Of a stretch of DNA of 64,000 nucleotides, positions 8,240 to 58,941 are shown in pieces. The notes beneath the pieces were generated by a model that was not told the DNA's origin, searched no databases, and worked only from the letters and a program-made list of their open reading frames with translations. The translations under genes were made by a program, and so were the position numbers. The stretch spans positions 186,001 through 250,000 of IMG/VR virus record IMGVR_UViG_3300023174_000033. One strand, written 5' to 3'. How positions within the stretch are numbered: the first letter of the stretch is position 1; every line of letters starts with the position of its first letter.

Positions 8240-8255
8240 TAAATAATTTTTGAAA

Positions 8256-11200: not shown

Positions 11201-12128
11201 GGGTAGTATATGGTATCATAATGATTTAGCAAGTGACTATAATGCTGACTTTATAAATGTCCCAACTTATAGTAATACAGCTATTTCTACAAATATAATA
11301 ATTGAACAATCCGGAACAGGATATTTACCAACAACACTATCAATAAATGGCGCAACACAAAATATTACATGGATTGGTGGTACACCATCGATGGGGACTC
11401 CAAATGTGACTGAAATTGTTGGTTTTTCATTCATAAACTATGATGGAACTTTTGTTGATATTTTAGGACAAGTATCTAATGGTCTAGTAGCTGGTGGTGG
11501 ATCTCCTGGTCCACAAGGAAATCAAGGTCCTAAAGGTAGTACTGGTAACCAAGGTAATACTGGTCCACAAGGTGTTCAAGGAGGTGCTGGGGGTGCTACT
11601 GGTAACCAAGGTAATACTGGTCCACAAGGTTTCCAAGGTAATCAAGGAGTTCAAGGTGTGACTGGCCCACAAGGTTTTCAAGGTCTGCAAGGTCCACAAG
11701 GTAATCAAGGAGTTCAAGGTGTGACTGGCCCACAAGGGTTTCAAGGTATGCAGGGTCCTTCGATATCACCCATTGTGGGAAGTTGGAGCTTATCCGCAGG
11801 TGGAAATACTGTTAGCTTTACAGTTACTGCGGGTCAATCATATGTTATGTGGGTAAATGGAAATATCCCAAATGGTATTGTTAATTGGAATGCGACAGTT
11901 ACACTATCAAACACAAACGTACCCGCGATAGGTGCACAGTATGGGTGGTATTATATTGCAGGAAATGCTTTGGTTTTAACATCAATACCAAGTCAGATAG
12001 TTGGAAGTCCGGGAAGTATCAGTACCGCATCACCACCGATTACAAATTCAAATACCTTTACGTTTGGTATAAATAATAACAGTGGTTCATCTAAAGTAAT
12101 ATATTACGGATACACTCAAGTGAGTTAA
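8256..12128 (+). CDS. Collagen-like (Gly-X-Y) tail fibre protein
   Basis: Several GPQG/GxTG triple-helix tracts, four copies of an H-x-x-G-x-YP-x-(I/V)Q domain and three P...(Y)xLG(S/T)...W fibre motifs. ATG 8256 is preferred over TTG 8250. Confidence 0.8.
10098..10199 (+). repeat. 18-bp tandem repeat encoding GPQG(R/S)T
   Basis: Five-plus copies of ggNccacaRggtagWact inside the collagen gene. Confidence 0.8.
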
Positions 12129-12149
12129 AATAAAAATACGGAATATTTA

Positions 12150-14423
12150 ATGTTTAGTAGACTTTCTAATTTTTCCGGACCTCTTAGTCGTTTTTCTAGT
12201 GGGGGTTTAGGGGAGGCGCAACCAAATCTATTATTAAGTTTAGATTCATTCAACTATGATTTATATGGCAAATCATTTACTTTTGATCCAGTTAATAACT
12301 ATGGTGTAACTTTTAGTTCCAATACAGTAACAGCATTAATTTCTGAAGGATGGAATCCATATGCTCGTTCAGTCCAATCATATAATGGACCTGTTAAATT
12401 AAAATTTCAAAGGGGTTCAGTTTCTGGACCATTGATGTGTGGTTTATCTAATTTAAGCGAGGTTGTGACTTACACTAACGTAAATTTTGGGTTTTATATA
12501 CAAACTGATAATTTGGTAACAATAGTTGAAAATCAAAGTAATTTATCAAATGTTGTGCCTTTTTTTCAAATATATGAAATATCTGGAACATTTTCATCAT
12601 CTACTATTTATAGTATTATTTTTGATGGGATAAGGGTTAGGTATTATATTGATGATGTTTTAGTGTATACATCATATTCTAGTCCAATGGTTACTCCTTT
12701 ATACTTATTTGTAACATTTTTAAATACTGCTGGGTTAGGTTTGACTAATATTGAATTTGGTTCATTTTCTCCTGTTTGGAATGACACATCTGGTAATGAT
12801 AGAAACTTTACTCTTGTGGGCGCACCAAGATATGCGAATAATTCTTTTAAATTTGATAGTGATTCAAGTCAATATGCAACAGGTAGTGATCTTGGAACAT
12901 TAAATCAATTCACTGTTGATACTTGGTTTAAGTTAAATTCATTACCAGCAACTGAATTTAATATACCACAAATTGTAACCGATATTTATGAAGCTGGTGG
13001 CAATTTAAACTTTTCATTGGGCTTTCAAACCGATTTCAAAATATTTGGCGGTTTCTTTATCTTCCCAATTTGGTATTATACGGATGGGTTTACACCAGAA
13101 ATTGATACTTGGTATAATGTTACTTTAACATATGATCAAGAACATCTGAATTTATATTTAAATGGTAATATTTATTCTTCTACTAGTTATGCTCTACAAG
13201 TATCTTCAGGTGGATTGGGTATTAACATAGGAAAACGATTTGATTTATCAGAATTTATAGATGGTCAGATTGATGTTGTTAAGATATGGGATGGATCATT
13301 AACATCAACTCAAATTTTAAATAACTATAATAGTATCAATACAAGATATATCTCTGCCACTACTAGCATAGTATTAAATGGTAGTTCCGCCATTGAAGTT
13401 CCTAGAGGTAACGATTTAGCATTAGGTACTAGTTATACTATAGAATTTTGGAGTAAAGCTGCAACTATGAGTACCCCTGGTCGAATTTTCACTGTTATGG
13501 CTCAAAGAGATGGTGATTCCAATATAGATATATTCTACCAATCTGGTAATTTAATTATCAGAAATGGTCAGAATGTAACTGCTGAACCAACTCCTGGTGT
13601 TTGGACACACGTTGCTATAGTATCAAACAATACCACTCTATCAGTATATTACAATGGTGTTGCTCAATCTGTTTCTGGTAATGGTGGCAATCTACAAGAT
13701 AATAGATTTCCTTTAGCAATTGGTTCTAGAGGACCTTACAATAATTTCCAATATTTTAATGGTTCTTTATATGGTATAAGAATAAATAATACTGTAGTTT
13801 ATACAACAGATTTCAACCCATATGAAGTTGCCCTACCACCAGCTAATATTCCTGGCACAGTTCTATTAATTAATGAATATCAAGTTTCCACTGGTAACTT
13901 TATAGATTCAACTTATAATAAATCTTTAGTTAATAAGGGTGCCACACATTCTACAGATGTGCCAGAAATACCTCAGTATCGATATCTCAGATGGGTAATG
14001 ACTCAAACAAGAGGTGCTGATTTTTTAGCGGGTGCAATACAAGTTGCTAGTTTGGTTTTATTATACCAGGGAGCTACAGTTAGTTGGGGTCCATCCGCAA
14101 GTGCTAGTAACCCGGATGGAACTACATTCCCTAATGAAACACCAATAAAGATTTTAGATTCTAATATATATACAAAATGGTGTAATACAATTTTTGGAAC
14201 TACAAGTTTTGGAACAGCAAGTATCTACATAGATAATGTTAATCCATTAAGATTTGACTCTTATTATTATGTGACTGCTAATGATGAAGAAATAAGAGAT
14301 CCTGTCAGTTGGACCTTAGCTGTTTCAAATGATAATTCTACTTGGTCAATACTAGATACTCGGTCAAATGTTGGTATAACTTATAGTAGACAAGCAAACA
14401 CACAGATATTTAATATATCTTAG
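12150..14423 (+). CDS. Fibre/receptor-binding protein with concanavalin A/LamG-like lectin domains
   Basis: Two LamG-like signatures (FTVDTWFK...WYNVTLTYD...LYLNG...IG...FIDGQIDVVKIW and YTIEFW...WTHVAIV...YYNG) plus a C-terminal F5/8-like segment (DPVSWTLAVSND..TW..LD). Confidence 0.75.
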   Translation: MFSRLSNFSGPLSRFSSGGLGEAQPNLLLSLDSFNYDLYGKSFTFDPVNNYGVTFSSNTVTALISEGWNPYARSVQSYNGPVKLKFQRGSVSGPLMCGLSNLSEVVTYTNVNFGFYIQTDNLVTIVENQSNLSNVVPFFQIYEISGTFSSSTIYSIIFDGIRVRYYIDDVLVYTSYSSPMVTPLYLFVTFLNTAGLGLTNIEFGSFSPVWNDTSGNDRNFTLVGAPRYANNSFKFDSDSSQYATGSDLGTLNQFTVDTWFKLNSLPATEFNIPQIVTDIYEAGGNLNFSLGFQTDFKIFGGFFIFPIWYYTDGFTPEIDTWYNVTLTYDQEHLNLYLNGNIYSSTSYALQVSSGGLGINIGKRFDLSEFIDGQIDVVKIWDGSLTSTQILNNYNSINTRYISATTSIVLNGSSAIEVPRGNDLALGTSYTIEFWSKAATMSTPGRIFTVMAQRDGDSNIDIFYQSGNLIIRNGQNVTAEPTPGVWTHVAIVSNNTTLSVYYNGVAQSVSGNGGNLQDNRFPLAIGSRGPYNNFQYFNGSLYGIRINNTVVYTTDFNPYEVALPPANIPGTVLLINEYQVSTGNFIDSTYNKSLVNKGATHSTDVPEIPQYRYLRWVMTQTRGADFLAGAIQVASLVLLYQGATVSWGPSASASNPDGTTFPNETPIKILDSNIYTKWCNTIFGTTSFGTASIYIDNVNPLRFDSYYYVTANDEEIRDPVSWTLAVSNDNSTWSILDTRSNVGITYSRQANTQIFNIS

Positions 14424-14496: not shown

Positions 14497-14730
14497 ATGG
14501 AAATTACATTAAATTCGCCTAAAAAAATTGTTCTCCAAGAAGAGAAAAGCAAAAATATCACCAAATTGACTGTATCTAGAGTTGTTGATTTACCAAAGCA
14601 GAAAGTAGTAAGATGTTTCATCGAAGAATTGGAAGAGCCAGTTGTTCTTTGGGAAGGTGCTGCTTATGATGCTGCTGGACAGTGGACTGATGCTGATGTT
14701 GAAGCTAGATTAGCTGCTTTATACGCTTAA
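14497..14730 (+). CDS. Small hypothetical protein (fibre-associated)
   Basis: 77-aa ORF with its own AATATATA at 14468..14475. Confidence 0.55.
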   Translation: MEITLNSPKKIVLQEEKSKNITKLTVSRVVDLPKQKVVRCFIEELEEPVVLWEGAAYDAAGQWTDADVEARLAALYA

Positions 14731-14781: not shown

Positions 14782-15657
14782 ATGTATTCAATCTTTCACT
14801 GTGAGGGTGGTATAGGCAAAAATATTTTAGCTACTGCAGTCGTATCATCACTCAAAAGCTCAGATCCTGACAGACAAATTATAGTTGTTTCTGCTTGGCC
14901 ACAAGTTTGGTTTAATAATCCTGATGTCCATCAGATTTACCCAATGGGTCAAGTTGCAAACTTCTATAAAAATTACGTAAAGGACAAAGATACTAAAGTC
15001 TATCGTCTTGAACCATACCACACAGAGGATTATATCCTCAACAAGAAACACTTAATTAAAATTTGGTGTGATTTACTTGGAGTGGATTGGAATGGTTCAG
15101 GACCTAGACTTTATTTTTCGCCCCTAGAACTAGAGTATATAAAAATAAAAATGCTGAATGGTGTTACTAAACCAATATTTTTATTACACACAAACGGTGG
15201 CGGTGGTCAAGGTCGACCATATTCTTGGTACAGGGATTTGCCAACACCAAATGCTTTAGATGTAGTTGAACACTTTAAAAGTGATTACCATATCTATCAC
15301 ATTGGTTATGAGGGTCAGCAAGTCTTAAATGGTTGCCATAAACTAACATTAGAAACAAGGGAAATATTAGCAGCTATCAATTTTTCACAAAAAAGACTTT
15401 TAATTGATTCATTCTCCCAACATGCCTCAGCAGCATTTGATTTAAAATCTGTTGTTTGTTGGGTTGGTAATGATTCATCAGTTCTTGGATATAATACAAA
15501 CGTGAATATCAAACCAAATATTGAACCTAAGTTTGATACATTACATTCATCTTATCTTGATGATTTTGATATTGGTGGTAATCCAGTTCAATTTCCTTAT
15601 GATAAATTAAGACTATTCGACTCAAATGAACTAATAAAAGAACTAAATAATTTATGA
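14782..15657 (+). CDS. GT-B glycosyltransferase, GT9/heptosyltransferase-like
   Basis: N-terminal GGIGK..(S)LK...PD..IIV...P..FNNP pattern, R(D)LP motif, and C-terminal IDSFSQHASAAF matching the GT9 DS..MHLAAA motif. Confidence 0.65.
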   Translation: MYSIFHCEGGIGKNILATAVVSSLKSSDPDRQIIVVSAWPQVWFNNPDVHQIYPMGQVANFYKNYVKDKDTKVYRLEPYHTEDYILNKKHLIKIWCDLLGVDWNGSGPRLYFSPLELEYIKIKMLNGVTKPIFLLHTNGGGGQGRPYSWYRDLPTPNALDVVEHFKSDYHIYHIGYEGQQVLNGCHKLTLETREILAAINFSQKRLLIDSFSQHASAAFDLKSVVCWVGNDSSVLGYNTNVNIKPNIEPKFDTLHSSYLDDFDIGGNPVQFPYDKLRLFDSNELIKELNNL

Positions 15658-16472
15658 GAAAAATCCATTACATATCTGGATTGCCAAGAAGTGGTTCAAC
15701 CCTTCTAACAAATATCCTTCTCCAAAACCCAAAAATCCAAACAACGGCAACTTCTTCTTTATTGGAGTTCATGTTGCAGGTCAGGGACAATTGGACAAAA
15801 CTAGAAGGACATACAGCACATCCAGATGGTCAAGATAAGTGGGCTGTTATTAAAAGTATTATGCAAACTTATCACAAAACAGATAAGGAAATTATTATTG
15901 ATAAAAACAGAGGATGGTCAAACCATATTGAGTTTGTTGAAAAGGTTACTGGTGAACCAGCGAGGATAATTGCTTGTGTTAGAAATCTTGAAGAAGTATG
16001 TGCTTCATTTGAAAAACTTTATAGGAAAAATAGAGCTAGTGGTGAAATTCATGGTGAGTTCTCAAACCCTAAAATGAAAACAATTGATGGTCGTGTATCT
16101 GTATGGACTTCTGACGAAGGCGTACTCGGTAGACCTTATGTATCTTTATTGGATACTGTTCAGAGAGGACTTGGTGATAGAATTTTATTCTTCCCATATG
16201 AGGAGTGGACAAATCAACCAAACAAATGGTTTAAAGCTCTTTATGATTTCCTTGGTGAAGAATATTATCAACATGACTTTGATAACATCGAACAAACTAT
16301 TAGGGAAAACGATGCTGGGTATGGTTGGGGATCTGATCTACATGAAATTAAAACTGGTAAGTTAAGACCAGCTGCATCTGAAGCTATTCAAGTAATTGGT
16401 AGAGATTGGTCTACAAAACTCCACAACACCGAGTTTTGGAAAAAGAAGAACGAAAAAAAGAGTATCATTTGA
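15654..16472 (+). CDS. PAPS-dependent sulfotransferase
   Basis: 5'-PSB loop SGLPRSGSTLL, DKNR, 3'-PB motif IACVRNLEEVCASF, YEE...P...LYDFLG. Overlaps the upstream GT (ATGA). Confidence 0.85.
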   Translation: MRKIHYISGLPRSGSTLLTNILLQNPKIQTTATSSLLEFMLQVRDNWTKLEGHTAHPDGQDKWAVIKSIMQTYHKTDKEIIIDKNRGWSNHIEFVEKVTGEPARIIACVRNLEEVCASFEKLYRKNRASGEIHGEFSNPKMKTIDGRVSVWTSDEGVLGRPYVSLLDTVQRGLGDRILFFPYEEWTNQPNKWFKALYDFLGEEYYQHDFDNIEQTIRENDAGYGWGSDLHEIKTGKLRPAASEAIQVIGRDWSTKLHNTEFWKKKNEKKSII

Positions 16473-16484
16473 TACTCTTTTTTT
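16453..16484. terminator. Bidirectional intrinsic terminator
   Basis: aaaaaaagagtatc-attt-gatactcttttttt between convergent genes. Confidence 0.8.
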
Positions 16485-16924
16485 TATCTACCAAGTTTAC
16501 CAAACTTAAACCACAATCTCTCATGGAAGAAATATAGTATCATTTTGGTTAGGACTTCTGTACCACCAATGGCCATTCCGATTTTCCAATCACCAGTGAT
16601 TAGCGCACTTAATATCATAGTATCAATAGTCCCAACGATTCTCCAAGTTATAGTTTTAGCTAGGTGTCTAGCTACAAAGTTATCAGGCTTCTTATAATCT
16701 ATATGAGCTACCCCATCTTTAATTGTCAGTACTCCTTTACAGGTAACATGCCATTTTTCACCAACACCTTCAATATAATCTTTGGTTGTTTTGGTCTCAG
16801 CATTGATAATAATATCAGATACTTGGATTTCTTCACCATCACGAAGTAATCTCCATCTGTTAGAATCATCAGTAGATACTGTGTTGTACCTAATTTGAAA
16901 TACTTGTTCTTTATTAGAGTTCAT
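16484..16924 (-). CDS. DUF2061-type membrane protein fused to an unknown N-terminal domain
   Basis: C-terminal RHLAKTITWRIVGTIDT...E..TK..LYFFHERLW is the DUF2061 pattern. Start moved to MNSNKEQ (16924) because the ORF-track start lies in the promoter region. Confidence 0.7.
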   Translation of the reverse strand: MNSNKEQVFQIRYNTVSTDDSNRWRLLRDGEEIQVSDIIINAETKTTKDYIEGVGEKWHVTCKGVLTIKDGVAHIDYKKPDNFVARHLAKTITWRIVGTIDTMILSALITGDWKIGMAIGGTEVLTKMILYFFHERLWFKFGKLGR

Positions 16925-16942
16925 AATTAATATATAAATCAT

Positions 16943-17827
16943 ATGAATAATGTTGTAATTTATTGTATAAAAAATATATTAACAGAAAAAGTTTACATTG
17001 GATCAGCGATTGATTACAAATCAAGATGGAGAAATCACAAGAACCAATTGAAGAATAATTTCCACCATAATATCAAATTACAAAATTCTTGGAATTTATA
17101 TGGTGATAATTCTTTTCTATTTGAAATATTAGAATATGTTGAAGATAAAAATATATTGATAGAAAGAGAACAATACTATTTAAACACAATATTATTTGCT
17201 TCAGAAAATGATGATAGATTTGATAAGTTGGGATATAATATATTGCGAGAAGCTGGAAATTCTATGGGTTATAGACATAGTACTGAAACTATTCTAAAAT
17301 TAAAAGGTGAAAATAATCCAATGTTTGGTAAATCTGTTTGGATTGGTAGGAACCACACTGAAGAATCAAAGGAATTAATATCTTTATCAAAGAAAGGTAA
17401 GTTAATAAAAAGTGATAACCACTTTTATAATAAAAATCATACTGATGAATCTAAAATAAAAATGTCCTTTAGTAGTAAAAGATTGTCTGGTTCTGATAAT
17501 CCAAATTTTGGTAAAGAATCCAAAAACAGAAAAATAGTAATACAACTTGATAAAAGTGGAAAAATAATAAAAGAGTGGTCACATGCTGGAGAAGCATCCA
17601 AAGCTTTGAGTATAAACTCACAGAATATAGGAGCTTGTTGTTTGGGTAAACAAAAAACTTATAAAGGTTTTATGTGGCAATATAAAATTGAAAAAGTAAA
17701 GAGTGACTCTGAAATCCAATTAGAAATTATATCATTGTATAACGAGACAAATATTACACAAAGAGAGATTTGTAAATTATACAAAATGTCTCCAAATAAA
17801 GTATCAAAACTATTAAAGACAACTTAA
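16943..17827 (+). mobile_element. Free-standing GIY-YIG homing endonuclease with NUMOD3/NUMOD1-like DNA-binding motifs
   Basis: VIYCIKN...KVYIGSA...RW..H...L...H.N..LQ.SW..YG...E..REQYYL...GYN, repeated H(T/S)xE(S/T)K..(I/M)S and NPMFGK motifs, and a C-terminal A.K.L.I....I..CC.GK.KTYKGF.W segment. Inserted antisense within the cysC operon. Confidence 0.85.
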
Positions 17828-17843
17828 GTTGTCTTTAATAGTT
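17808..17843. repeat. Perfect 36-bp palindrome at a convergent gene junction
   Basis: aactattaaagacaacttaagttgtctttaatagtt. Both flanking ORFs end in LLKTT* and share the central TTAA. Confidence 0.9.
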
Positions 17844-18243
17844 CTACTAAACTCTCATGTATTGATTCACTAACAAATTCTTTCCAAGAATCGTCATCAT
17901 TTCTAATTTTATACCTAATTTCCGTGGCTGAAATATTCGCAATATTTGAATCAACAATTATTTCTTCGACTCGATATCCCACGCCCCTTCCGTAATTAAC
18001 AGACGCAATATCTGGTATGATAATTATCTTAACCAATCCCCTTTCTATTTCATTTCCATATACTTTTTCCCAAAGTGATTTAACTTCTTCTGGTGTGAAT
18101 GGGTTTTTTTCATCTGTTGGTACATCTCGTATCATTATTAATACGGGTTCATTAATGTCCAAAAATTTAGAAAAAATTGTTTGATGTCCTTTGTGTGGAG
18201 TTTGGTACCTTCCTATAAATGCGTTGTATGGTTTTGTGTTCAT
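17824..18243 (-). CDS. HIGH/HxGH-family nucleotidylyltransferase (cytidylyltransferase-like); candidate minimal ATP sulfurylase
   Basis: FIGRYQTPHKGH, NPF, YGRGVGY and ISATEIR motifs. Overlaps the cysC stop codon. Confidence 0.7.
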   Translation of the reverse strand: MNTKPYNAFIGRYQTPHKGHQTIFSKFLDINEPVLIMIRDVPTDEKNPFTPEEVKSLWEKVYGNEIERGLVKIIIIPDIASVNYGRGVGYRVEEIIVDSNIANISATEIRYKIRNDDDSWKEFVSESIHESLVELLKTT

Positions 18244-18827
18244 TTTATATAATTTTTATTTTTTAGATATTGTATTAAAAAATCAACATTCTTTTCAATA
18301 TCTTCTTCTACATTATTTTCCAAATGGATAGCATTTTTTGGAATCTCAAATGGTGATGAAATACCCGTGAAATCTTTAATCTCACCAGCTCTTGCTTTTT
18401 TGTACAAACTTTTTGGATCTCTTGTCTCACAAGTCTCAAGTGATGCATCCACAAAAACCTCTGCAAATCTTTCACCAATAATTTCTTTTGATAATTGTCT
18501 ATTTGATTCAAAGGGTGAAATAAAAGAACAAATAACAATAAGTCCAGCATCATTCATAAGTTTACAAACTTCGGCGACTCTTCTTAGGTTTTCAATTCTA
18601 TCTTCATCTGAAAATCCAAGGTTTTTATTCAAACCAAGTCTTGTGTTATCACCATCCATTATGTAAGTGTGGTGACCCATTTCAAAGAGTTTTGATTCGA
18701 GTACATTTGCAATTGTGGATTTTCCAGAGCCAGAAAGGCCAGACATCCATATAGTGCAGGATTTTTGATTTTTCAAAGTTTCTCTGTCTACTTTGGATAC
18801 TTTGAAATCGTGCTTAGTTATATTCAT
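18240..18827 (-). CDS. cysC: Adenylyl-sulfate (APS) kinase
   Basis: IWMSGLSGSGKST P-loop, DGDN.R.GL..NLGFS.EDR.EN.RRVAEV, FISP, RDPK.LYKKARAGEIK.FTGISSPFE.P. Confidence 0.95.
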   Translation of the reverse strand: MNITKHDFKVSKVDRETLKNQKSCTIWMSGLSGSGKSTIANVLESKLFEMGHHTYIMDGDNTRLGLNKNLGFSDEDRIENLRRVAEVCKLMNDAGLIVICSFISPFESNRQLSKEIIGERFAEVFVDASLETCETRDPKSLYKKARAGEIKDFTGISSPFEIPKNAIHLENNVEEDIEKNVDFLIQYLKNKNYIK

Positions 18828-18914: not shown

Positions 18915-21900
18915 ATGTCAACTTACAGTTTAACCCTTAGACAAGATGTGGGAAGGAAATTAACGATTCAAGAACTGGATCATAACTTTCTATATCTTGA
19001 AGATCTCACATCAGAAGGTGGTGGTTCAGTAAATTTACCAAAAGGATATGTGGTCATTGGTGGTGGTCTGACAGGATCAGCAACTGGATCAGAATCGTTC
19101 ACATTTGATAGTACAAAACAAAATATAATAGTTGGTTATAGCTCCAATATTACTGGAACTACATCGTATTCATCTATCGTGGGTGGTACGGATAACACAA
19201 TAGATTTATCTTCTAAATCTGGTATATTTTCTGGTGTTAGTGCTAAAATTTGTAATAATTCAGAAAGGTCTGTAATTATTGGTGGTTCACAAGATAAGAT
19301 TTTAGATTATTCTTGTAGGTCAACTGTTATTGGCGGTTTTAGAAACTGTATTACTGATTTTTCTTGTAATTCTTCTGTAATGGCTGGATGTTGTAATAAA
19401 GTTCAATGTAATTCTTGTAATTCATCTATTATGGGTGGATGTTGCAATACAATTTGTGATAATTCTTGTGCTTCAAGTATAGTAGGGGGATATAGAAACA
19501 CCATCTGTTACGAATCTGATTATTCATCAGTAATTGGTGGGTGTTGTAATAGAATCTGTGATTACTCTGACCACTCAGGTATATTCTCAGGTGGTTGGAA
19601 TAAGATACAATATTCTGACAAATCAGTTGTATTAGGTGGTAATAACAACCACATATGTATTTATTCTGATAGGTCTGGTGTTTTAGCTGGACGATGTAAT
19701 CAAATCATTGGTTTTTCTAATTATTCAACAATTGTGGGTGGATGTTGTAATGGAATAGCTTACTATTCTTGTTCATCAACCATCACTGGTGGTAGTTGTA
19801 ATTTTATTGTTGGTAGAATTGGTGGTCCATCTGCATCTTGTTATGGATCTTGTGATTCATCAATAATTGGTGGGTGTTGTAACCATATTTATGACCAATC
19901 TATGGCTTCTTCAATATTGGGTGGATGTTGTAATTCAATTACTTGTCAAACTTGTAATTCAAGTGTGTTAGGTGGTATATGTAACACAATTACTTGCCAA
20001 AGTTGTAACTCATCAGTTATTGGTGGGTGTTGTAATACTATTTACTATTCAAGTCAATCCACAATAGTTGGTGGTCAATGTAACCAAATCTGTGGATATT
20101 GGGATAGTAATTGTGAACCTAATTATAATTCAATCATTGGTGGTTGTAGAAACTGTATAGTTACTTCTGACTACGCTTCTATTATTGGTGGATATTGTAA
20201 TTGTATAATGGGATATGATGGTGATTACTCATCTATCATTGGTGGTGGTTATAATACCATTTGTTATAACTCACAACATTCTTCTATAGTTGGTGGGCAT
20301 TATAATACAATTTATACTTCTAACTTCTCATCTGTGATTGGTGGATGTTGTAACTGGATTTGTGACTATAGTTGCAGCTCAATAATTGCAGGTGGCCACT
20401 ATAACTACATTTTTAATTCTTGTTGTTCAGCAATGGTTGGTGGATATGAAAGTTGTATCTGTGACGAATCTTGTCTTTCAACTGTTATTGGGGGTTCTAG
20501 AAACTGTGTTATTGACAATTCTTGTGGATCATCTATTTTAGGCGGTAATTGTAATAGAATCTGCTGTTCTAATAATTCTGTAATTATTGGTGGTTCAAAC
20601 TTAACATTAGCTACTCAAAGTAACACAGTTTTAGTTCCCTATCTAAAAATTAATAATTTAGATCAGTGTAACGCTAATACGAAAATCCTAGTCGTTGATA
20701 GTCAAGGTAATGTAAATTACAGAACTGCTGAGTCTTTAGGTGGTGGTGCTTCTCTATATGGAATTAATAATATTTTGACTGATACTACATTTTCAAACAT
20801 ATTGGGTGGTAATGCAAATAGAATAACCTGTGTTTTTTCATCTTCAATATTAGGTGGTTATCAGAACTCTATTTGTTGTTATTCTGATAATTCAACAATA
20901 GTTGGTGGTTCTGCTAACCTAATCAGTGAAAATTCTGATTCTTCAACAATAGTTGGTGGTTATGAGAATTCTATTTGTTGTTTTTCATCCTATTCTTCAG
21001 TAATAGGTGGAGCCAATAACAGAATATGTGATAATTCTTGTCAATCAAGTATAGTAGGTGGTGGTTGTAATGTGATTTATTTTGATTCAGGGTATTCATC
21101 TGTGATTGGTGGGTGTTGTAATAGAATCTGTGATAATTCTTGTAATTCTGGTATATTCTCAGGTGGTTGGAATAAGATACAATATTCTAGTAAATCAGTT
21201 GTATTAGGTGGTAATAATAACCACATATGTTACTATTCAGATAGGTCTGGTATATTAGCTGGTCGTTGTAATCAAATTAAAGATTATTCTTATTATGCAT
21301 CAATCGTTGGTGGTAGATGTAATAAAATTTGTGGAAAGGAATGTCTTTGTGACCCAGGGTTCTTGTATGGTTCCTGTGAATCTACTATAATTGGTGGATG
21401 TTGTAACAGTATTTGCGATACATCTTTTAGGTCATCTATCTTAGGAGGGTCTTGTAACACAATCACTTGTCAAAGTTGTAATTCCACTATTATGGGTGGT
21501 TATGAAAATGATATTAAAGAAAGGTCTAAAAATAGTACCATAATTGGTGGTGGATGTAACACAATTGGTGTTTGTTACACAAATCCAGTTTGTAATTCAG
21601 CTATTATATCTAGTTATGGAAGCTGTATAGAAAACTATACTTGTAATTCAACTATACTAGGTGGTGCTAATAATAAAATTTCTGGTGACTATGTAGTTGG
21701 CCCAACTGGAGATAGATCTAATGGTGATACTGTAATAGGTGGATATCGTAATACAATATGTTATAATTCATGTTACTCATCAATTGTTGGTGGTAGATGT
21801 AACCTAATCTGTGATAATTCTGATTCTTCTTCAATTGTTGGTGGATGTTGTAATAGAGTTTATTGTTCTGATAATTCAACAATCACTGGTGGTTGTTTCA

Positions 21901-24371
21901 ATGTAATTGAACAAAACTCATTTAGATCAACAATATCTGGTGGTGATTGGAACTCAATCGAAAGTTGTTCTAATAAGTCTGGTATCTTTGCTGGTGCTGG
22001 TAACCACATCTGTGATTACTCACAGAGGTCAGTAATTGTTGGTGGACACTGTGCTAGAATAACACAAGATTCGTGTAGATCAACAGTATCTGGTGGTTTT
22101 AGAAACTGTATCAGAGTTGACTCTTGTGATTCAGCTATTGTTGGTGGATACTGTGGTCAAATCTGTGAATCTAGCTGCAAAGCAACTATTATTGGTGGTG
22201 AATGTAATGAAGTACTTTATAATTCAAACAACTCTTCAATAATTGGAGGTCGTTGTAATACCATCTACAGTGCTGTTAATTCAGCAATAGTTGGTGGTTG
22301 TAACTTATACTTAAGTACTTCTAACACTGTATTGGTTCCTAAATTGAGAATTAATAGTGTTATAAACTCACCATCTGATGATACAATCTTAACAAGAGAT
22401 AATTCAGGAAATGTAAACTTTAGGTCAGTTGCTTCATTACAACCAAGTTTTGGTGGTATAATTAATGGTGCTACTGAATCAATGACTGGTTTTATGAACC
22501 AGATTTGTAACTCAAATAACTCATCAGTTATTGGTGGTTCTTATAACTGTGTTTGTTGTTCTTCTAATCAATCATCAATAATTGGTGGTTACAGTAATGC
22601 AATTAATTTTTACTCAGTAAACTCAACAGTATTAGGTGGTACTGATAATAAAATTTGTTGTTCAGTCGTATCATCTATAATTGGTTCATATGTTTCTATT
22701 ATAACAAAATCAGTTGCTTCCAATATTATGGGTGGGGCTGGAAATCAAATACGTTGTTGTTCTAGTGGTTCATCCATTATTGGCGGACAAGGTAACGGTG
22801 TTTTATACTACTCTTGTGGTTCATCTGTAGTTGGTGGATGTTGTAATGCGGTAGTTTATGGGTCTAATGTATCATCAGTAATTGGTGGTTCTTGTAACAT
22901 AATCTATTCTAGTGACCATTCATCAATAGTAGGTGGTTCGTGTAATTGTGTTACTTACTGTTCTGATAGAAGTTCCATTTTAGGTGGATGTTGTAATAAA
23001 GTATGTAGCTATTCTTGTTACTCATCGATAATTGGTGGTGCGTGTAATCAAATTTGTGGAGCATTCTATGGTTATGGTTATGGTCCAGGAGGTTATCAAT
23101 ATGGTTCTTGTTATTCATCTATAGTAGGTGGAAAGTGTAATAGAGTAATGTTTGACTCAAGCTATTCATCTGTAATTGGTGGGTGTAGAAATGAAATTTG
23201 TACATACTCTGACAACTCATCAATTTTTGGTGGATGTAGTAACTACATAGGTTGTGAAGTTAATATGTCCTCAATAATTGGTGGATATGAAAACAATATC
23301 TACTGTCGTTCTTGTAGATCTACTATTGTTGGTGGATATAGTAATAACATATCATATGGTTCATGTGATTCAACTATAGTAGGTGGATATGATAACTACA
23401 CTACTTCTTACAGTAAATATTCAACTATAGTTGGTGGTTATAATAACTCTATTTGTGCATATTCTTGTAATACAACAATCTCAGGTGGTTGTGGAAATCA
23501 AATTTGTTCATACTCTTGCAACTCATCTATATTTGGTGGTAGTTGTAACTGTATCTGTGGTTGGAATGGACCTGGTCCAACGTTTGTTTTTGGATCTTGT
23601 AATTCTACTATTGTCGGTGGGTGTTGCAATAGAATTCAAAGAGATTCTAGTTTCTCAAGTATTATTGGTGGGTGTTGCAATACGGTTGATTATTACGCCG
23701 ATTTTTCAACAGTTATTGGGGGTTATAGAAATATAGTAAACGATGGTTCATGTTATTCATCTGTAATAGGTGGTTGTTGTAATAGAATCTGTTATAGTTC
23801 AGAACACTCCGGTATATTTGGTGGTGGTTGGAATAAAATTGAACGTTCAGACAAATCTGTTGTGTTGGGTGGTAATAATAACCACATATGCCAAAATTCT
23901 GAAAGGTCTGGCATCTTAGCTGGTCGTTCCAATCTAATTAAAGATTATTCTTGTTATGCATCAATCGTTGGTGGTTGTCGTAATAATGTTTGTTACTACT
24001 CTTGTTCTTCTGCTGTGATAAGTGGTTGTTGTAATATGATATGTGACTATAGTTATACTTCAACTATAATTGGCGGAGCTTGTAACTGTATTTGTAACTC
24101 TTGTTGTTCAACTATAATTGGTGGATGTTGTAATACAATAAATCAAGATACAAATAACTCAGTCATACTTGGTGGTGTTGGACTTTGTTTAACATCAAGC
24201 AATAGTAATACTGTTTATGTTCCAACACTTATGACTACTACTATTTCAAATGTGAACCCTGTTTCTTGGAAACTCGGTACAACAGCTTCTGGTTCAGTAA
24301 CTGTTGATACGACACAATATATTGAAGTTTCGATAAATGGTGTTATATACAAACTGGCAGTTGTTCAATAA
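18915..24371 (+). CDS. Very Cys-rich beta-helix/beta-roll fibre protein (about 15-aa S-S-I-I-G-G-C-C-N repeat)
   Basis: 1818 aa. N-terminal LRQ..GR.LT..ELD.NF.YL fibre anchor, then three long repeat blocks separated by NTV(L/Y)VP.L linkers. AATATATA at 18881..18888. Confidence 0.75.
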   Translation: MSTYSLTLRQDVGRKLTIQELDHNFLYLEDLTSEGGGSVNLPKGYVVIGGGLTGSATGSESFTFDSTKQNIIVGYSSNITGTTSYSSIVGGTDNTIDLSSKSGIFSGVSAKICNNSERSVIIGGSQDKILDYSCRSTVIGGFRNCITDFSCNSSVMAGCCNKVQCNSCNSSIMGGCCNTICDNSCASSIVGGYRNTICYESDYSSVIGGCCNRICDYSDHSGIFSGGWNKIQYSDKSVVLGGNNNHICIYSDRSGVLAGRCNQIIGFSNYSTIVGGCCNGIAYYSCSSTITGGSCNFIVGRIGGPSASCYGSCDSSIIGGCCNHIYDQSMASSILGGCCNSITCQTCNSSVLGGICNTITCQSCNSSVIGGCCNTIYYSSQSTIVGGQCNQICGYWDSNCEPNYNSIIGGCRNCIVTSDYASIIGGYCNCIMGYDGDYSSIIGGGYNTICYNSQHSSIVGGHYNTIYTSNFSSVIGGCCNWICDYSCSSIIAGGHYNYIFNSCCSAMVGGYESCICDESCLSTVIGGSRNCVIDNSCGSSILGGNCNRICCSNNSVIIGGSNLTLATQSNTVLVPYLKINNLDQCNANTKILVVDSQGNVNYRTAESLGGGASLYGINNILTDTTFSNILGGNANRITCVFSSSILGGYQNSICCYSDNSTIVGGSANLISENSDSSTIVGGYENSICCFSSYSSVIGGANNRICDNSCQSSIVGGGCNVIYFDSGYSSVIGGCCNRICDNSCNSGIFSGGWNKIQYSSKSVVLGGNNNHICYYSDRSGILAGRCNQIKDYSYYASIVGGRCNKICGKECLCDPGFLYGSCESTIIGGCCNSICDTSFRSSILGGSCNTITCQSCNSTIMGGYENDIKERSKNSTIIGGGCNTIGVCYTNPVCNSAIISSYGSCIENYTCNSTILGGANNKISGDYVVGPTGDRSNGDTVIGGYRNTICYNSCYSSIVGGRCNLICDNSDSSSIVGGCCNRVYCSDNSTITGGCFNVIEQNSFRSTISGGDWNSIESCSNKSGIFAGAGNHICDYSQRSVIVGGHCARITQDSCRSTVSGGFRNCIRVDSCDSAIVGGYCGQICESSCKATIIGGECNEVLYNSNNSSIIGGRCNTIYSAVNSAIVGGCNLYLSTSNTVLVPKLRINSVINSPSDDTILTRDNSGNVNFRSVASLQPSFGGIINGATESMTGFMNQICNSNNSSVIGGSYNCVCCSSNQSSIIGGYSNAINFYSVNSTVLGGTDNKICCSVVSSIIGSYVSIITKSVASNIMGGAGNQIRCCSSGSSIIGGQGNGVLYYSCGSSVVGGCCNAVVYGSNVSSVIGGSCNIIYSSDHSSIVGGSCNCVTYCSDRSSILGGCCNKVCSYSCYSSIIGGACNQICGAFYGYGYGPGGYQYGSCYSSIVGGKCNRVMFDSSYSSVIGGCRNEICTYSDNSSIFGGCSNYIGCEVNMSSIIGGYENNIYCRSCRSTIVGGYSNNISYGSCDSTIVGGYDNYTTSYSKYSTIVGGYNNSICAYSCNTTISGGCGNQICSYSCNSSIFGGSCNCICGWNGPGPTFVFGSCNSTIVGGCCNRIQRDSSFSSIIGGCCNTVDYYADFSTVIGGYRNIVNDGSCYSSVIGGCCNRICYSSEHSGIFGGGWNKIERSDKSVVLGGNNNHICQNSERSGILAGRSNLIKDYSCYASIVGGCRNNVCYYSCSSAVISGCCNMICDYSYTSTIIGGACNCICNSCCSTIIGGCCNTINQDTNNSVILGGVGLCLTSSNSNTVYVPTLMTTTISNVNPVSWKLGTTASGSVTVDTTQYIEVSINGVIYKLAVVQ

Positions 24372-34587: not shown

Positions 34588-35283
34588 TTAATTTTTTTGT
34601 TTAACTCTCTTTTGTATCATTTCAAAAAATACTTGGTTATTTTCCATTATGACAAAATTTCTTCCACTATTTATACAAGATATCGCGGTTGTTCCGCTTC
34701 CGCCAAACGGGTCTAATATAGTATCTCCAATGTTTGAATGTTTCAATATGAGATTATCAATTAATTTTAAAGGTTTTTGTGTTGGGTGTTCCAACCTTTC
34801 CTTTCCGTGACAGAGTGGATAATGATAGATACCTTTATCATATTCTGAATTGAAGGTTGGTTTACCACCTTTTACAAATGTGTAAAAGTATTCAAGAGCA
34901 TTTGATAAGTAATTTATTTTTGAATTTATTGGAACAGGATTAGTTTTAACCCACTGGCAAATTCTTAATTGTTTGAATTTCCATTTTTCTGCATAAAATT
35001 TTATTGTGTTAGATTTCCAAACATCATAAAAAATTATACAAGTGCCCCCTTTTTTAAGGACACGTTTGAATTCGGAAAAAAGTGGATCTAAATCAATTTC
35101 TTCTTTATCCCATTCCCCAAACTCCAATGATATATTATTATATTTTTTGTTATTGGAACCGTTCTTAAAATTTGATTCCCTTGAAATATTATAAGGTGGA
35201 TCTGTTAGAATCAGATCAATTGATTCTGATTCAAGTTCTTTTAGTAATAAATAACAATCTCCAAATAATATTTTATTGGACAT
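34588..35283 (-). CDS. Amino (N6-A/N4-C) DNA methyltransferase, beta class
   Basis: GDC, DLILTDPPY catalytic motif, HPTQKP, then LDPFGGSGTT SAM-binding motif. Confidence 0.92.
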   Translation of the reverse strand: MSNKILFGDCYLLLKELESESIDLILTDPPYNISRESNFKNGSNNKKYNNISLEFGEWDKEEIDLDPLFSEFKRVLKKGGTCIIFYDVWKSNTIKFYAEKWKFKQLRICQWVKTNPVPINSKINYLSNALEYFYTFVKGGKPTFNSEYDKGIYHYPLCHGKERLEHPTQKPLKLIDNLILKHSNIGDTILDPFGGSGTTAISCINSGRNFVIMENNQVFFEMIQKRVKQKN

Positions 35284-36483: not shown

Positions 36484-36489
36484 ATTTAG

Positions 36490-58362: not shown

Positions 58363-58941
58363 ATGCTTAATCTAAAAGATAATAATTTTTCCTGTATAAT
58401 TTTTGACTTGAACTATGGGGATCTTCCATCTTCCGACCGACTGAAATTAATGGAAAAGGCGACGAGTATACTCTATTCAAAGGAATTTACTGTTTATGAC
58501 TTATTCAGAACAAATCTAGAAAAAACTGAAAAATCTTTATTTGGGGTATCAGAAAATTTGGATAATGAGTCACTTCGCCGAAATGCAATCTATATTCTTG
58601 AGACATTTCATTTGGAAAAAGTTATGGTCAAATATCTCGGTGAAAATAATTACACCGAGATAAAGTCAGATGGTTCAGAATATAGATTTGAGTTAATAAC
58701 TAATATTTTGGACGAAGGAGTTGATAATTATTTTATCAATGGGTTTACATTTAGATTTGAAAGAATGAAAAGATACAATTACCCAAGACTAAAACAAAAT
58801 TTGAAAGCTGGCATGGTTGTGGAATATCTTGACAATAATAATAGATGGAAACAAAAAACTATCGTAGACTTGGAAAAAGAATACAATAGTCTTTATAGTT
58901 TGTTGATAAAATATAATAAACTGAGGTACGAAGTATATTAA
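58363..58941 (+). CDS. Hypothetical protein
   Basis: Start moved to MLNLKDN (58363), 5 nt after AATATATA at 58350..58357. Confidence 0.5.
   Translation: MLNLKDNNFSCIIFDLNYGDLPSSDRLKLMEKATSILYSKEFTVYDLFRTNLEKTEKSLFGVSENLDNESLRRNAIYILETFHLEKVMVKYLGENNYTEIKSDGSEYRFELITNILDEGVDNYFINGFTFRFERMKRYNYPRLKQNLKAGMVVEYLDNNNRWKQKTIVDLEKEYNSLYSLLIKYNKLRYEVY

What the first reader, a model, noticed from the sequence alone, without database searches (positions are those of the whole stretch)
14782..18827. Self-contained glycosylation and sulfation module among the fibre genes
Seen: an overlapping GT9-like glycosyltransferase and sulfotransferase pair (+) converges on cysC, an HxGH nucleotidylyltransferase and DUF2061 (-). 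The block sits between the collagen/lectin fibres and the Ser/Cys-rich beta-helix fibre. No PAPS/APS reductase is in the window. Known: ATP sulfurylase plus APS kinase make PAPS, the donor for sulfotransferases, and GT-B heptosyltransferases of the Aah/TibC type glycosylate serines of beta-helix repeats. Inference: the phage makes its own PAPS to coat its fibres, or the host surface, with a sulfated glycan. On this reading cysC is a virion-modification gene, not an assimilatory auxiliary metabolic gene. A second glycosyltransferase lies near the capsid gene (58938..59681).
Basis: partly seen in the sequence, partly recalled or inferred. Interest (0 to 1): 0.8.

Follow-up and report, generated by a model that had tools for sequence, protein, structure and literature searches.

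The report
Phage PAPS-making fibre sulfation cassette
A giant freshwater phage carries, beside its huge repeat fibres, a conserved five-gene cassette that most likely makes the sulfate donor PAPS itself, using a small, uncharacterised candidate sulfate-activating enzyme, and feeds a sulfotransferase and a glycosyltransferase, so its 'cysC' is probably not a sulfur-assimilation gene.

Summary
One gene was missed: a GIY-YIG homing endonuclease at 16943-17827.

The linkage is conserved. An APS kinase, a 112-156 aa HxGH nucleotidyltransferase and DUF2061 lie together in about 50 IMG/VR contigs, and 25 of these also carry the GT9-fold protein and the sulfotransferase. Of 69 viral contigs with canonical cysC, 32 carry HxGH and 7 carry a classical sulfurylase (CysN or Sat). 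None carries both, and none has cysH nearby.

The same pair occurs in cells:
- **Fusions:** HxGH is fused to bona fide APS kinases.
- **Sulfated-polysaccharide context:** it sits beside sulfotransferases, a CysQ-like phosphatase and a Wzx flippase.
- **Nitrospirales:** it sits without a kinase directly after APS reductase and sulfite reductase.

This pattern fits HxGH being an unrecognised minimal ATP sulfurylase, although its fold is nearest PPAT and NMNAT, not Sat.

The GT9-like/sulfotransferase pair lies within 1.8 kb of giant Ser/Thr-rich repeat fibres in 9 of about 11 lineages with different gene orders. That favours the fibre as acceptor but does not prove it.

The acceptor and every enzyme activity remain untested.

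The parts
14497..14730 (+). Small conserved ORF (77 aa) upstream of the GT9-like gene. Function unknown.
   Evidence: It is 71-82% identical in the three closest relatives L002-L004, in the same position. It has no family hit.
14782..15657 (+). GT9-fold (GT-B) transferase, 291 aa. Presumed glycosyltransferase. Donor sugar unknown.
   Evidence: It has no HMM hit. The AF2 model has pLDDT 86. Foldseek PDB matches are 3tov at 5e-12, WaaF (1psw), TibC (4rap) and WaaC. Invariant residues include GGxGK at the N-terminus and KR...DS..QH in the C-half. The family has 487 metagenomic members, and JGI names some of them ADP-heptose:LPS heptosyltransferase.
15654..16472 (+). PAPS-dependent sulfotransferase, 272 aa.
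   Evidence: It scores PF13469 at 57.5 bits and PF00685 at 42.6 bits, and phrog_27463 at 2e-45. The PRxGST (5'-phosphosulfate loop) and VR[ND] (3'-phosphate) motifs are kept in 17 of 18 family members. Many viral clusters appear in the ESM Atlas.
16453..16484 (.). AT-rich 14-bp palindrome between the convergent sulfotransferase and DUF2061 genes. Terminator-like.
   Evidence: Pattern scan only.
16484..16942 (-). DUF2061 protein with a roughly 90-aa N-terminal extension. Partner of the APS kinase. The true start is probably the ATG at 16924-16922 (Met7 of the ORF).
   Evidence: PF09834 scores 77 bits over residues 94-144. It lies adjacent to the kinase/HxGH pair in nearly all viral loci. It is fused to APS kinase in Chitinophagaceae. 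Hydropathy is only moderate. The endonuclease-less variant joins at 16929.
16943..17827 (+). GIY-YIG/NUMOD3 homing endonuclease. A mobile insertion, not a working part of the cassette.
   Evidence: It scores TIGR01453 at 131 bits, and also hits PF01541 and PF07460. It is absent from L002-L004. A contig in run X25 skips exactly 16930-17823. The two flanking genes are the diverged ones.
17824..18243 (-). Minimal HxGH nucleotidyltransferase (139 aa). Proposed ATP sulfurylase analogue that makes APS.
   Evidence: The fold is nearest PPAT (Z 15) and archaeal NMNAT (Z 13). Sequence matches to NMNAT models are far below their cut-offs.
18240..18827 (-). Canonical adenylyl-sulfate (APS) kinase CysC, 195 aa.
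   Evidence: PF01583 scores 214 bits, PRK03846 255 bits (cut-off 163) and TIGR00455 229 bits (cut-off 138.7).
18915..24371 (+). 1818-aa Ser/Gly/Asn/Cys-rich repeat fibre. Leading candidate acceptor.
   Evidence: It has no Pfam hit. It holds 71 GGxxNx[IVLA] units, mostly 17 residues apart, with near-invariant Ser at two positions per unit. Repeat fibres lie within 1.8 kb of the GT9-like/sulfotransferase pair in 9 of about 11 lineages.
8250..14423 (+). Collagen-repeat protein (8250-12128) and LamG/F5-8C lectin-domain protein (12150-14423), upstream of the cassette. Further possible acceptors.
   Evidence: PF01391 hits at 2e-25 in three stretches. PF13385 hits at 3e-32. Collagen-like fibres adjoin the cassette in L012 and L033.
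58938..59681 (-). Second glycosyltransferase (GT2), beside the head genes. Not shown to be linked to the cassette.
   Evidence: PF00535 scores 27.5 bits and phrog_1721 hits. Its neighbours are the major head protein at 59997-61787 and the head protease at 61865-63937.

Best explanation
The block is a self-contained sulfation cassette with two halves.

**Donor half (16484-18827, minus strand).** The 139-aa HxGH nucleotidyltransferase adenylylates sulfate (ATP + sulfate gives APS + PPi). It would act as a minimal analogue of ATP sulfurylase. CysC then phosphorylates APS to PAPS. The DUF2061 protein is a fixed partner of the kinase, possibly a membrane tether, but its role is unknown.

**Transfer half (14782-16472, plus strand).** This half runs in the same direction as the fibre genes. 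The GT9-fold enzyme would add a sugar, and the PAPS-dependent sulfotransferase would sulfate the product. The most likely target is the Ser/Thr-rich repeats of the neighbouring giant fibres, made late in infection.

**The endonuclease.** The GIY-YIG gene is a selfish insertion, not a working part.

**Shown here.** Gene identities, folds and conserved linkage.

**Inferred.** The HxGH reaction, the donor-to-transferase coupling, the sugar and the acceptor.
For: **1. The kinase, HxGH and DUF2061 travel together in viruses.**
- They are adjacent in about 50 IMG/VR loci. The short phage kinases still hit PF01583 above its threshold.
- In the window lineage a canonical CysC occupies the same slot.

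**2. Different sulfotransferase and GT families join the same core.**
- Sulfotransfer_3 plus the GT9-like protein is seen in 25 loci.
- Sulfotransfer_2 plus GT2 is seen in L057-L059.

**3. In cells, HxGH is tied to sulfate activation.**
- It is fused to, or overlaps, kinases that pass the apsK equivalog cut-off of 138.7 bits. Scores are 159-277 bits in Flavobacteriales, Chitinophagaceae, candidate-phyla-radiation bacteria and Pyrinomonadaceae.
- The fusion order, kinase then NTase, matches the APSK-then-Sat order of L211.
- Many APSK+CTP_transf fusion clusters exist in viruses and archaea.

**4. Its cellular neighbours fit PAPS use or APS use.**
- Chitinophagaceae: Sulfotransfer_3 lies directly downstream.
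- Flavobacteriales L129: a CysQ-like Inositol_P phosphatase, a Wzx flippase and two Sulfotransfer_1 genes follow it.
- All five Nitrospirales loci: the order is sulfite reductase, APS reductase (2goy, 2.5e-59), then HxGH, with no kinase. So HxGH stands alone where APS is consumed and is paired with a kinase where PAPS is consumed.

**5. Complementary distribution in viral cysC loci.**
- Of 69 loci, 32 have HxGH and 7 have CysN or Sat. None has both.
- No Sat or CysN was found around HxGH in about 130 loci or in the window.
- No cysH was found near any viral locus.

**6. The sulfotransferase keeps both PAPS-binding motifs**.

**7. Link to the fibres.**
- The GT9-like/sulfotransferase pair lies 59-1805 bp from giant repeat fibres in 9 of about 11 dereplicated lineages, with at least five different gene orders. 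It is often on the same strand with short gaps.
- None of about 12 core-only lineages has such a fibre within 2 kb; the nearest is 6.8 kb away in L054.
Against: - No activity has been measured.
- HxGH is closest in sequence and fold to NMNAT and PPAT. No ATP sulfurylase appears among its strong matches. JGI annotates it as NMNAT.
- In candidate-phyla-radiation bacteria, the fusion's neighbours are a NUDIX protein and a histidine phosphatase. In Thermodesulfobacteriota and Dadabacteria, HxGH sits in an uninformative housekeeping context next to a GATase.
- About half the viral core loci show no recognisable sulfotransferase within the flanks held, up to 8 kb and less at contig ends.
- The fibre link rests on adjacency among related phages and on low-complexity similarity.
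- Pfam describes DUF2061 as a membrane protein, and LPS-type GT9 enzymes act at the membrane. Both would fit a host-envelope target equally well.
- Whole genomes could not be checked for sat or cysDN elsewhere.
Confidence: 0.55

Rival explanations
1. The donor chemistry is the same, but the target is the host envelope. The GT9-fold enzyme and the sulfotransferase would modify LPS core, capsule or another lipid-linked glycan at the inner membrane. The effect would be a seroconversion-like change that blocks superinfection or stops progeny sticking to debris.
For: - LPS-type GT9 enzymes (3tov, WaaF, WaaC) are the best or equal-best structural matches.
- Pfam describes DUF2061 as a membrane protein, and it is fused to the kinase in Chitinophagaceae.
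- Flavobacterial homologues of the core sit in a Wzx/sulfotransferase polysaccharide cluster.
- Other phage loci carry NodU-like carbamoyltransferases and multi-domain GT1/GT9/FkbM proteins.
Against: - The GT9-like/sulfotransferase pair is persistently adjacent to fibre genes and often co-oriented with them, across rearranged loci. That suggests late expression with structural genes.
- DUF2061 hydropathy is only moderate.
- No flippase, polymerase or lipid-carrier gene was identified in the window ORFs that were scanned.
Confidence: 0.2
2. The kinase and HxGH make a different 3'-phosphorylated nucleotide donor or cofactor rather than PAPS. One model is the Campylobacter Cj1415/Cj1416 route to 3'-phospho-CDP-amidate. 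Others are NAD or CoA-type salvage by an NMNAT/PPAT-like enzyme plus a kinase.
For: - The HxGH fold and sequence are nearest PPAT and NMNAT.
- The short phage kinases fall below the apsK cut-offs and match only the N-terminal 100 residues.
- Neighbours are NUDIX and histidine phosphatase proteins in candidate-phyla-radiation bacteria, and a GATase in Thermodesulfobacteriota.
- From my own knowledge, an APS-kinase homologue (Cj1415) phosphorylates a non-sulfate nucleotide.
Against: - The window's kinase and the cellular partners pass curated APS-kinase equivalog cut-offs.
- HxGH is linked to APS reductase and sulfite reductase in Nitrospirales.
- HxGH is linked to sulfotransferases of four Pfam families (Sulfotransfer_1 to _4).
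- HxGH and classical sulfurylases replace each other next to viral cysC.
- HxGH lacks about 30 residues of NMNAT between the PDI and ISxT motifs.
Confidence: 0.1
3. This is the standard AMG reading. Phage cysC, with helpers, boosts host assimilatory sulfate reduction and cysteine supply during infection.
For: - This is the published interpretation of phage cysC (PMC10914622).
- In Nitrospirales, HxGH does sit in an assimilatory operon.
- About half the viral core loci lack a detected sulfotransferase.
Against: - In the window the kinase lies about 1.8 kb from a sulfotransferase, with DUF2061, the endonuclease and HxGH between them.
- No APS/PAPS reductase is in the window or in about 120 viral loci.
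- PAPS is a dead end for assimilation unless a PAPS reductase is present.
- The cassette lies among late structural genes.
Confidence: 0.05
4. The acceptor is neither fibre nor envelope. It could be a small molecule, a peptide, tyrosine residues of a protein directly (TPST/RaxST-like), or phage DNA.
For: - The weak PDB matches of the sulfotransferase are to CurM-ST and to tyrosylprotein sulfotransferases.
- Chitinophagaceae operons add Asp/Asn hydroxylase, 2OG and PhyH oxygenases.
- In one phage group the core sits among primase, nuclease and kinase genes.
- The fibre is 5.9% Tyr.
Against: - Those PDB matches are not significant (E 0.03-0.5) and cover mainly the PAPS loop.
- The strict pairing with a GT9-fold enzyme and with fibres argues for a glycan on a structural protein.
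Confidence: 0.1

Closest known systems
Dedicated PAPS supply plus sulfotransferase cassettes of bacteria: NodP/NodQ with NodH or NoeE in rhizobia, and RaxP/RaxQ with RaxST in Xanthomonas (my own knowledge)
   Same: Extra copies of sulfate-activation genes are kept next to a sulfotransferase to decorate a specific product rather than to make cysteine. The window's sulfotransferase N-terminus weakly hits the NoeE model.
   Different: Those systems use CysD/CysN-type sulfurylase. Here that slot is filled by a 139-aa HxGH protein plus DUF2061. The cassette is also phage-borne and sits beside fibre genes.
Bifunctional PAPS synthases (APS kinase fused to Sat-type ATP sulfurylase; PDB 1x6v, 2gks)
   Same: Kinase-then-NTase fusions of HxGH exist in candidate-phyla-radiation bacteria, Pyrinomonadaceae, Saprospiraceae, phages and archaea. 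This is the domain order of the viral APSK::Sat fusion L211.
   Different: The C-terminal domain is a 110-140 aa PPAT/NMNAT-like unit. It has no detectable Sat similarity and no PUA-like domain.
Archaeal NMNAT (NadM type) and PPAT (CoaD)
   Same: They share the Rossmann-like HxGH fold, the GRxQxxHxGH and ISxTxxR motifs, and whole-domain superposition at Z 13-15.
   Different: Scores are far below the family cut-offs, 38 bits against 127. HxGH is about 30 residues shorter. It has extra invariant residues (RD after strand 2, and GRGVGY). Its genomic context is sulfur and sulfation, not NAD or CoA.
GT9 heptosyltransferases: WaaC/WaaF (LPS core) and TibC/Aah (serine heptosylation of autotransporter beta-helix repeats)
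   Same: The GT-B fold matches. A D-S-x-x-Q-H motif sits where GT9 enzymes bind the donor (the motif role is from my own knowledge). As with TibC-TibA, the gene lies next to a Ser-rich short-repeat protein.
   Different: There is no PF01075 hit. The protein is 291 aa against about 320-406 aa. It has no invariant Cys for a TibC-type iron finger. Its N-terminal loop is GGxGK. Donor and acceptor are unknown.
Virus-encoded virion glycosylation: mycobacteriophage capsid and tail-tube glycosylation, Mimivirus fibril and collagen glycosylation, and Bacillus BclA collagen-like glycoprotein as a bacterial analogue (my own knowledge)
   Same: A virus-encoded transferase sits beside structural genes, and the candidate substrates are repeat or collagen-like surface fibres.
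   Different: I know of no virion glycan reported to be sulfated, and none turned up in the literature searches. None of these systems brings its own donor-synthesis pathway for sulfate.
Phage cysC as an auxiliary metabolic gene (PMC10914622)
   Same: It is the same gene family, found in large freshwater phages.
   Different: In this window and in 32 of 69 viral cysC loci it is embedded with HxGH and usually DUF2061. Ten of the 69 loci also have a detected sulfotransferase. None has cysH nearby.
Campylobacter jejuni Cj1415/Cj1416 phosphoramidate-donor pathway (my own knowledge)
   Same: An APS-kinase homologue works with a nucleotidyltransferase to make a 3'-phosphorylated activated donor for a surface glycan.
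   Different: The kinase here is a canonical CysC, and the transferase is a canonical PAPS-type sulfotransferase. No glutamine kinase was seen.

Membership tests
Adenylyl-sulfate kinase (CysC; TIGR00455 / PF01583) | Full-length match above the curated equivalog and subfamily cut-offs, with a P-loop | tested here: met
   For 18240-18827: PRK03846 255 bits (cut-off 163), TIGR00455 229 bits (cut-off 138.7), PF01583 214 bits.
Sulfotransferase (PF13469 / PF00685) | HMM score above the gathering threshold | tested here: met
   57.5 bits (cut-off 27) and 42.6 bits (cut-off 22).
Sulfotransferase (PF13469 / PF00685) | Conserved 5'-phosphosulfate loop and 3'-phosphate Arg/Ser motif for PAPS | tested here: met
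   PRxGST and VR[ND] are kept in 17 of 18 relatives. The roles of the motifs are from general knowledge of the family.
Sat-type ATP sulfurylase (PF01747) | Sequence or fold similarity to the Sat catalytic domain | tested here: not met
   There is no Sat hit in Pfam, NCBIfam, the PDB profile search or the top Foldseek/VIA matches. The only match is a 76-residue partial hit at rank 21 in AFDB.
Sat-type ATP sulfurylase (PF01747) | Catalyses ATP + sulfate to APS + PPi | not testable with these tools
   This is inferred only from gene context.
Archaeal/NadM-type NMNAT | HxGH and ISxTxxR motifs | tested here: met
   GRYQTPHKGH and ISATEIR are present and conserved across 34 sequences. Both motifs are shared by the whole superfamily.
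Archaeal/NadM-type NMNAT | Score above the curated cut-off over the full length | tested here: not met
   The best score is 38 bits against a cut-off of 127 and covers only residues 9-80. The protein is 139 aa against 168-181 aa.
Glycosyltransferase family 9 (PF01075) | Match to the family HMM | tested here: not met
   The window protein and three relatives return 0 families.
Glycosyltransferase family 9 (PF01075) | GT-B fold most similar to solved GT9 enzymes | tested here: met
   All top 12 PDB matches are GT9 proteins, with E-values from 5e-12 to 4e-8 and TM 0.56-0.70.
BAHT protein heptosyltransferases (TibC/Aah) | Cys-based iron finger and the extra elements of a roughly 406-aa enzyme | tested here: not met
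   There is no invariant Cys among 17 relatives, and the length is 291 aa. TibC ranks below the LPS-type GT9 enzymes. The feature list is from my own knowledge.
DUF2061 (PF09834) | HMM score above the gathering threshold | tested here: met
   77.3 bits (cut-off 23.1) over residues 94-144.
GIY-YIG homing endonuclease | GIY-YIG catalytic domain plus NUMOD3 DNA-binding motifs, with presence/absence polymorphism | tested here: met
   It hits TIGR01453 at 131 bits, PF01541 and PF07460. It is absent in L002-L004. A variant contig lacks it.
Assimilatory sulfate-reduction AMG set | APS/PAPS reductase (cysH) present with cysC | tested here: not met
   A jackhmmer search seeded with APS reductase finds nothing in the window or in about 120 viral loci. 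The rest of the 465-kb genome was not seen.

The most novel reading that the evidence does not exclude
The small HxGH protein represents a third, minimal class of ATP sulfurylase of about 110-170 aa, related to PPAT and NMNAT rather than to Sat or CysD. It would be widespread in phages, Bacteroidota, Nitrospirales, candidate-phyla-radiation bacteria and archaea, often fused to APS kinase or partnered with DUF2061. Phages would use it to make PAPS on their own and to put sulfated glycans on their giant repeat fibres. That would be the first sulfated phage virion. It would also mean that about half of the canonical 'cysC AMG' calls sampled here (32 of 69 viral contigs) are not assimilatory.
Probability: 0.35. 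Interest if true: 0.9.

Novelty: new variant of a known kind. Interest (0 to 1): 0.78.

Why it matters
- **Phage ecology.** Phage cysC is routinely counted as a sulfur-assimilation AMG in ecological studies (PMC10914622). If it is instead the donor arm of a sulfation cassette, those inferences need revision for a substantial share of cases.
- **Enzymology.** A PPAT-sized enzyme that activates sulfate would add a new enzyme family to a textbook step of the sulfur cycle. It would explain orphan APS-kinase fusions in many uncultured bacteria and archaea. It would also be a compact part for enzymatic PAPS supply.
- **Virion biology.** Sulfated, glycosylated fibres would be a new kind of virion surface chemistry. 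They could bear on adsorption, on sticking to mucus or polysaccharide, and on host range in lakes.

Tried and rejected
- **Near relatives in GenBank phages.** None were found. There were only short hits to the homing endonuclease and to cysC.
- **Profile and PDB sequence searches for the GT-like protein.** These gave no hits. Only the fold search resolved it.
- **ATP sulfurylase among the structural matches of HxGH.** It was not found. I therefore do not file HxGH under Sat.
- **Hidden sulfotransferases in core-only phage loci.** hhalign of 11 neighbour families against three sulfotransferase profiles gave nothing convincing. The best was 12% probability.
- **Neighbours in L111 downstream of HxGH.** They have no PDB homologues.
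- **Literature.** I found no paper linking phage cysC to sulfotransferases, none on DUF2061 function, and none on an NMNAT-like sulfurylase. The library is incomplete.
- **Promoter and terminator scan.** Promoter-like sites were at the chance level. Only two palindromes are worth noting.
- **Metatranscriptomes.** Two RNA libraries hold pieces of DUF2061, HxGH and cysC from this phage or a 90-99% relative. Coverage is too thin, and the runs were chosen with that gene, so nothing can be said about timing or about GT/sulfotransferase/fibre expression.
- **HxGH as the ADP-heptose-forming RfaE domain II feeding the GT9-like enzyme.** I rejected this as the main reading. The kinase/HxGH/DUF2061 core occurs widely without the GT9-like gene, and its kinase is an APS kinase, not a sugar kinase.
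- **The endonuclease as a group I intron.** I rejected this. It lies between two genes on the opposite strand, and the variant junction is intergenic.

Full report
**Source and setting.**
The window is part of IMGVR_UViG_3300023174_000033, a 464,605-bp viral contig. It has about 32% G+C. It carries head protein and head protease genes, two tRNAs and a run of very large fibre-like genes. Near-identical DNA occurs in lake and freshwater metagenomes from several independent studies. No close relative exists among GenBank phages.

**What is at 14782-18827.**
Six ORFs fill the block, not five.
- **14782-15657 (+), 291 aa.** It has no HMM hit in Pfam, NCBIfam or PHROGs. A model built on 17 relatives has pLDDT 86. 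It matches GT9 glycosyltransferases first: 3tov at 5e-12, then WaaF, TibC and WaaC.
- **15654-16472 (+).** It overlaps the previous gene by 4 nt. It is a sulfotransferase, with PF13469 at 57.5 bits and PF00685 at 42.6 bits. Both PAPS-binding motifs are conserved in the family.
- **16484-16942 (-).** It ends in a DUF2061 domain scoring 77 bits.
- **16943-17827 (+).** It is a GIY-YIG/NUMOD3 homing endonuclease.
- **17824-18243 (-).** It is a 139-aa HxGH nucleotidyltransferase.
- **18240-18827 (-).** It is a canonical APS kinase, at 255 bits against a cut-off of 163.

The window encodes no APS/PAPS reductase, Sat or CysN.
- a collagen-repeat protein and a lectin-domain protein upstream;
- downstream, an 1818-aa protein with 16% Ser, 9.4% Cys and 71 units of a 17-residue repeat with two near-invariant serines.

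The GT at 58938-59681 is a GT2 next to the head genes.

**Conserved linkage in viruses.**
I searched IMG/VR with HxGH and found 50 loci. In almost all of them an APS-kinase-like gene, HxGH and DUF2061 are adjacent or overlapping. In 25 of them the GT9-like protein and the same sulfotransferase family are part of the cluster.

In most phages the kinase is a short form of about 145 aa. It still scores above the PF01583 threshold (38-71 bits) but falls below the NCBIfam equivalog cut-offs. In the window's own lineage (L002-L004) a full canonical CysC holds that position.

Other phages attach different transferases to the same core. L057-L059 have Sulfotransfer_2 and GT2. Others have a NodU-like carbamoyltransferase, a GT1/GT9/FkbM multi-domain protein or a prolyl-hydroxylase-type oxygenase.

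The reverse search, starting from canonical cysC, gave 69 viral loci:
- 32 have HxGH, and 30 of those also have DUF2061. Some are CysC::HxGH fusions.
- 7 have a classical sulfurylase fused to the kinase. Six are CysN::CysC (for example L155, matching 1zun_B at 3e-154). One is APSK::Sat (L211, matching 2gks at 9e-122).
- The two sets do not overlap.
- None of these loci has cysH within the flanks held, up to 8 kb.

**The same core in cells.**
A scan of one genome per species found 167 matches.
- **Chitinophagaceae.** Twenty-four MAGs, including megabase contigs and a 4.7-Mb chromosome, share the same order. An Asp/Asn hydroxylase gene comes first. A DUF2061::APS-kinase fusion follows (TIGR00455 at 178.5 bits, cut-off 138.7). 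HxGH comes next, overlapping its stop. A Sulfotransfer_3-like protein is last.
- **Fusions.** Candidate-phyla-radiation bacteria, Pyrinomonadaceae and Saprospiraceae have APS-kinase::HxGH fusions. The two tested score 159 and 200 bits on TIGR00455. The ESM Atlas holds many such fusion clusters in viruses and archaea.
- **Flavobacteriales.** A canonical CysC (246-277 bits on TIGR00455) sits next to HxGH. In L129 the next genes are an Inositol_P (CysQ-type) phosphatase, a Wzx flippase and two Sulfotransfer_1 genes. In L120 they are MetK and AhcY.
- **Nitrospirales.** In all five loci HxGH has no kinase. It lies directly after an APS reductase (2goy at 2.5e-59; PF01507) and a sulfite reductase-TusA gene.
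- **Thermodesulfobacteriota and Dadabacteria.** The context is uninformative.

**Reading of HxGH.**
By sequence and fold it is a minimal member of the HxGH nucleotidyltransferase superfamily. It is nearest PPAT (Z 15) and archaeal NMNAT (Z 13; profile E 1e-9). It is about 30 residues shorter than NMNAT and has its own invariant residues. No Sat-type sulfurylase appears among its strong matches, so it is not a member of that family.

Its associations point to one reaction:
- HxGH is paired or fused with APS kinase wherever sulfotransferases are the consumers.
- It is alone where an APS reductase is the consumer.
- It is never found beside a classical sulfurylase.
- In fusions it holds the position that Sat holds in PAPS synthases.

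The simplest reaction that fits all of this is ATP + sulfate to APS + PPi. That is an adenylyl transfer of the kind this superfamily performs. This is inference from context, not a measurement. UniProt/AFDB and JGI names for the family are generic or say 'NMNAT'. I found no paper describing it.

**Reading of DUF2061.**
It follows the kinase, as a neighbour or a fusion. Its hydropathy is moderate. A membrane tether or a regulatory partner is possible. I cannot decide between them.

**The acceptor.**
I dereplicated the loci by HxGH identity.
- The GT9-like/sulfotransferase pair lies 59-1805 bp from giant Ser/Thr/Gly/Asn-rich repeat fibres in 9 of about 11 lineages.
- These lineages show at least five different gene orders. 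The pair is often on the same strand as the fibre gene, with gaps under 100 bp.
- None of about 12 lineages with the core alone has such a fibre within 2 kb; the nearest is 6.8 kb away in L054.
- The fibres are of two kinds. Some are Cys-rich GGxxNxI solenoid-like repeats, as in the window. Others are collagen-like GTS/GAT repeats.

This supports a fibre-modification role and late co-expression. Three caveats apply. The lineages are related. The similarity is partly low-complexity. Adjacency is not proof. The TibC/Aah analogy is only partial, because LPS-type GT9 enzymes match at least as well and the TibC-specific features are absent. A host-envelope target therefore remains a serious rival.

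**The homing endonuclease.**
It is absent from the closest relatives. A contig in a metatranscriptome library joins 16929 to 17824, skipping exactly 894 bases. Compared with L002 and L003, the flanking genes are far more diverged than the rest of the cassette. HxGH is 45-49% identical and DUF2061 is 42% identical (to L003, over its length), against 71-82% for the other genes. The window's HxGH is instead 59-67% identical to the HxGH of other lineages and of Chitinophagaceae. This pattern fits allele replacement accompanying endonuclease invasion.

**Comparison with the literature.**
Phage cysC is treated as an assimilatory sulfate-reduction AMG (PMC10914622). My searches found no link to sulfotransferases.

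**Verdict.**
The most interesting product of the check is the candidate new ATP sulfurylase family. The acceptor and every enzymatic step still need experiments.

Noticed in passing
window 16943-17827, with junctions at 16929 and 17824: A GIY-YIG homing endonuclease is inserted between DUF2061 and HxGH. A variant contig lacks it exactly (an 894-bp skip). The two flanking genes are mosaic relative to sister phages, which suggests co-conversion during homing.
   Followed up: yes
window 18915-24371: The fibre has an extreme composition: 9.4% Cys (about 170 cysteines, often as CC pairs) and 16% Ser, in about 71 copies of a 17-residue unit (S..S[ST][IV][IVL]GG[C][C]N.I). It has no Pfam hit.
   Followed up: partly
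L019 5972-7525 and five related loci: A NodU/CmcH-type carbamoyltransferase lies directly upstream of the kinase/HxGH/DUF2061 core in phages that lack the GT9-like/sulfotransferase pair. This hints at other glycan decorations built around the same core.
   Followed up: no
L012 11164-14040 and seven related loci: A 959-aa multi-domain protein (GT1, a weak GT9 match and an FkbM methyltransferase) lies a few kb from the cassette.
   Followed up: no
L018-type loci (L018 2693-5923): In one phage group the core sits among a SegE-like GIY-YIG endonuclease, a primase, a PD-(D/E)XK nuclease and a zeta-toxin-like kinase rather than among structural genes.
   Followed up: no
L055, L062 (Chitinophagaceae): The bacterial DUF2061::APSK, HxGH and sulfotransferase genes are surrounded by an Asp/Asn beta-hydroxylase, a 2OG-Fe(II) oxygenase and two PhyH proteins. 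This looks like a hydroxylation-plus-sulfation pathway for an unknown product.
   Followed up: partly
window 25329-27215 (-): A 628-aa protein with ankyrin repeats lies just downstream of the fibre block.
   Followed up: no
window 34588-35283 (-) and 36412-36634 (-): An N6/N4 DNA methylase (PF01555) and two tRNA genes (Gln-TTG and Glu-TTC).
   Followed up: no
window 17805-17846 and 16453-16484: There are two long AT-rich palindromes. One has a 19-bp stem and lies exactly over the HxGH / endonuclease 3' junction. The other has a 14-bp stem and lies between the convergent sulfotransferase and DUF2061 genes.
   Followed up: no
L057 11868-12371: An ART-PolyVal ADP-ribosyltransferase domain protein and an IS605 OrfB/Cas12f-like TnpB lie near the Sulfotransfer_2/GT2 version of the cassette.
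   Followed up: no
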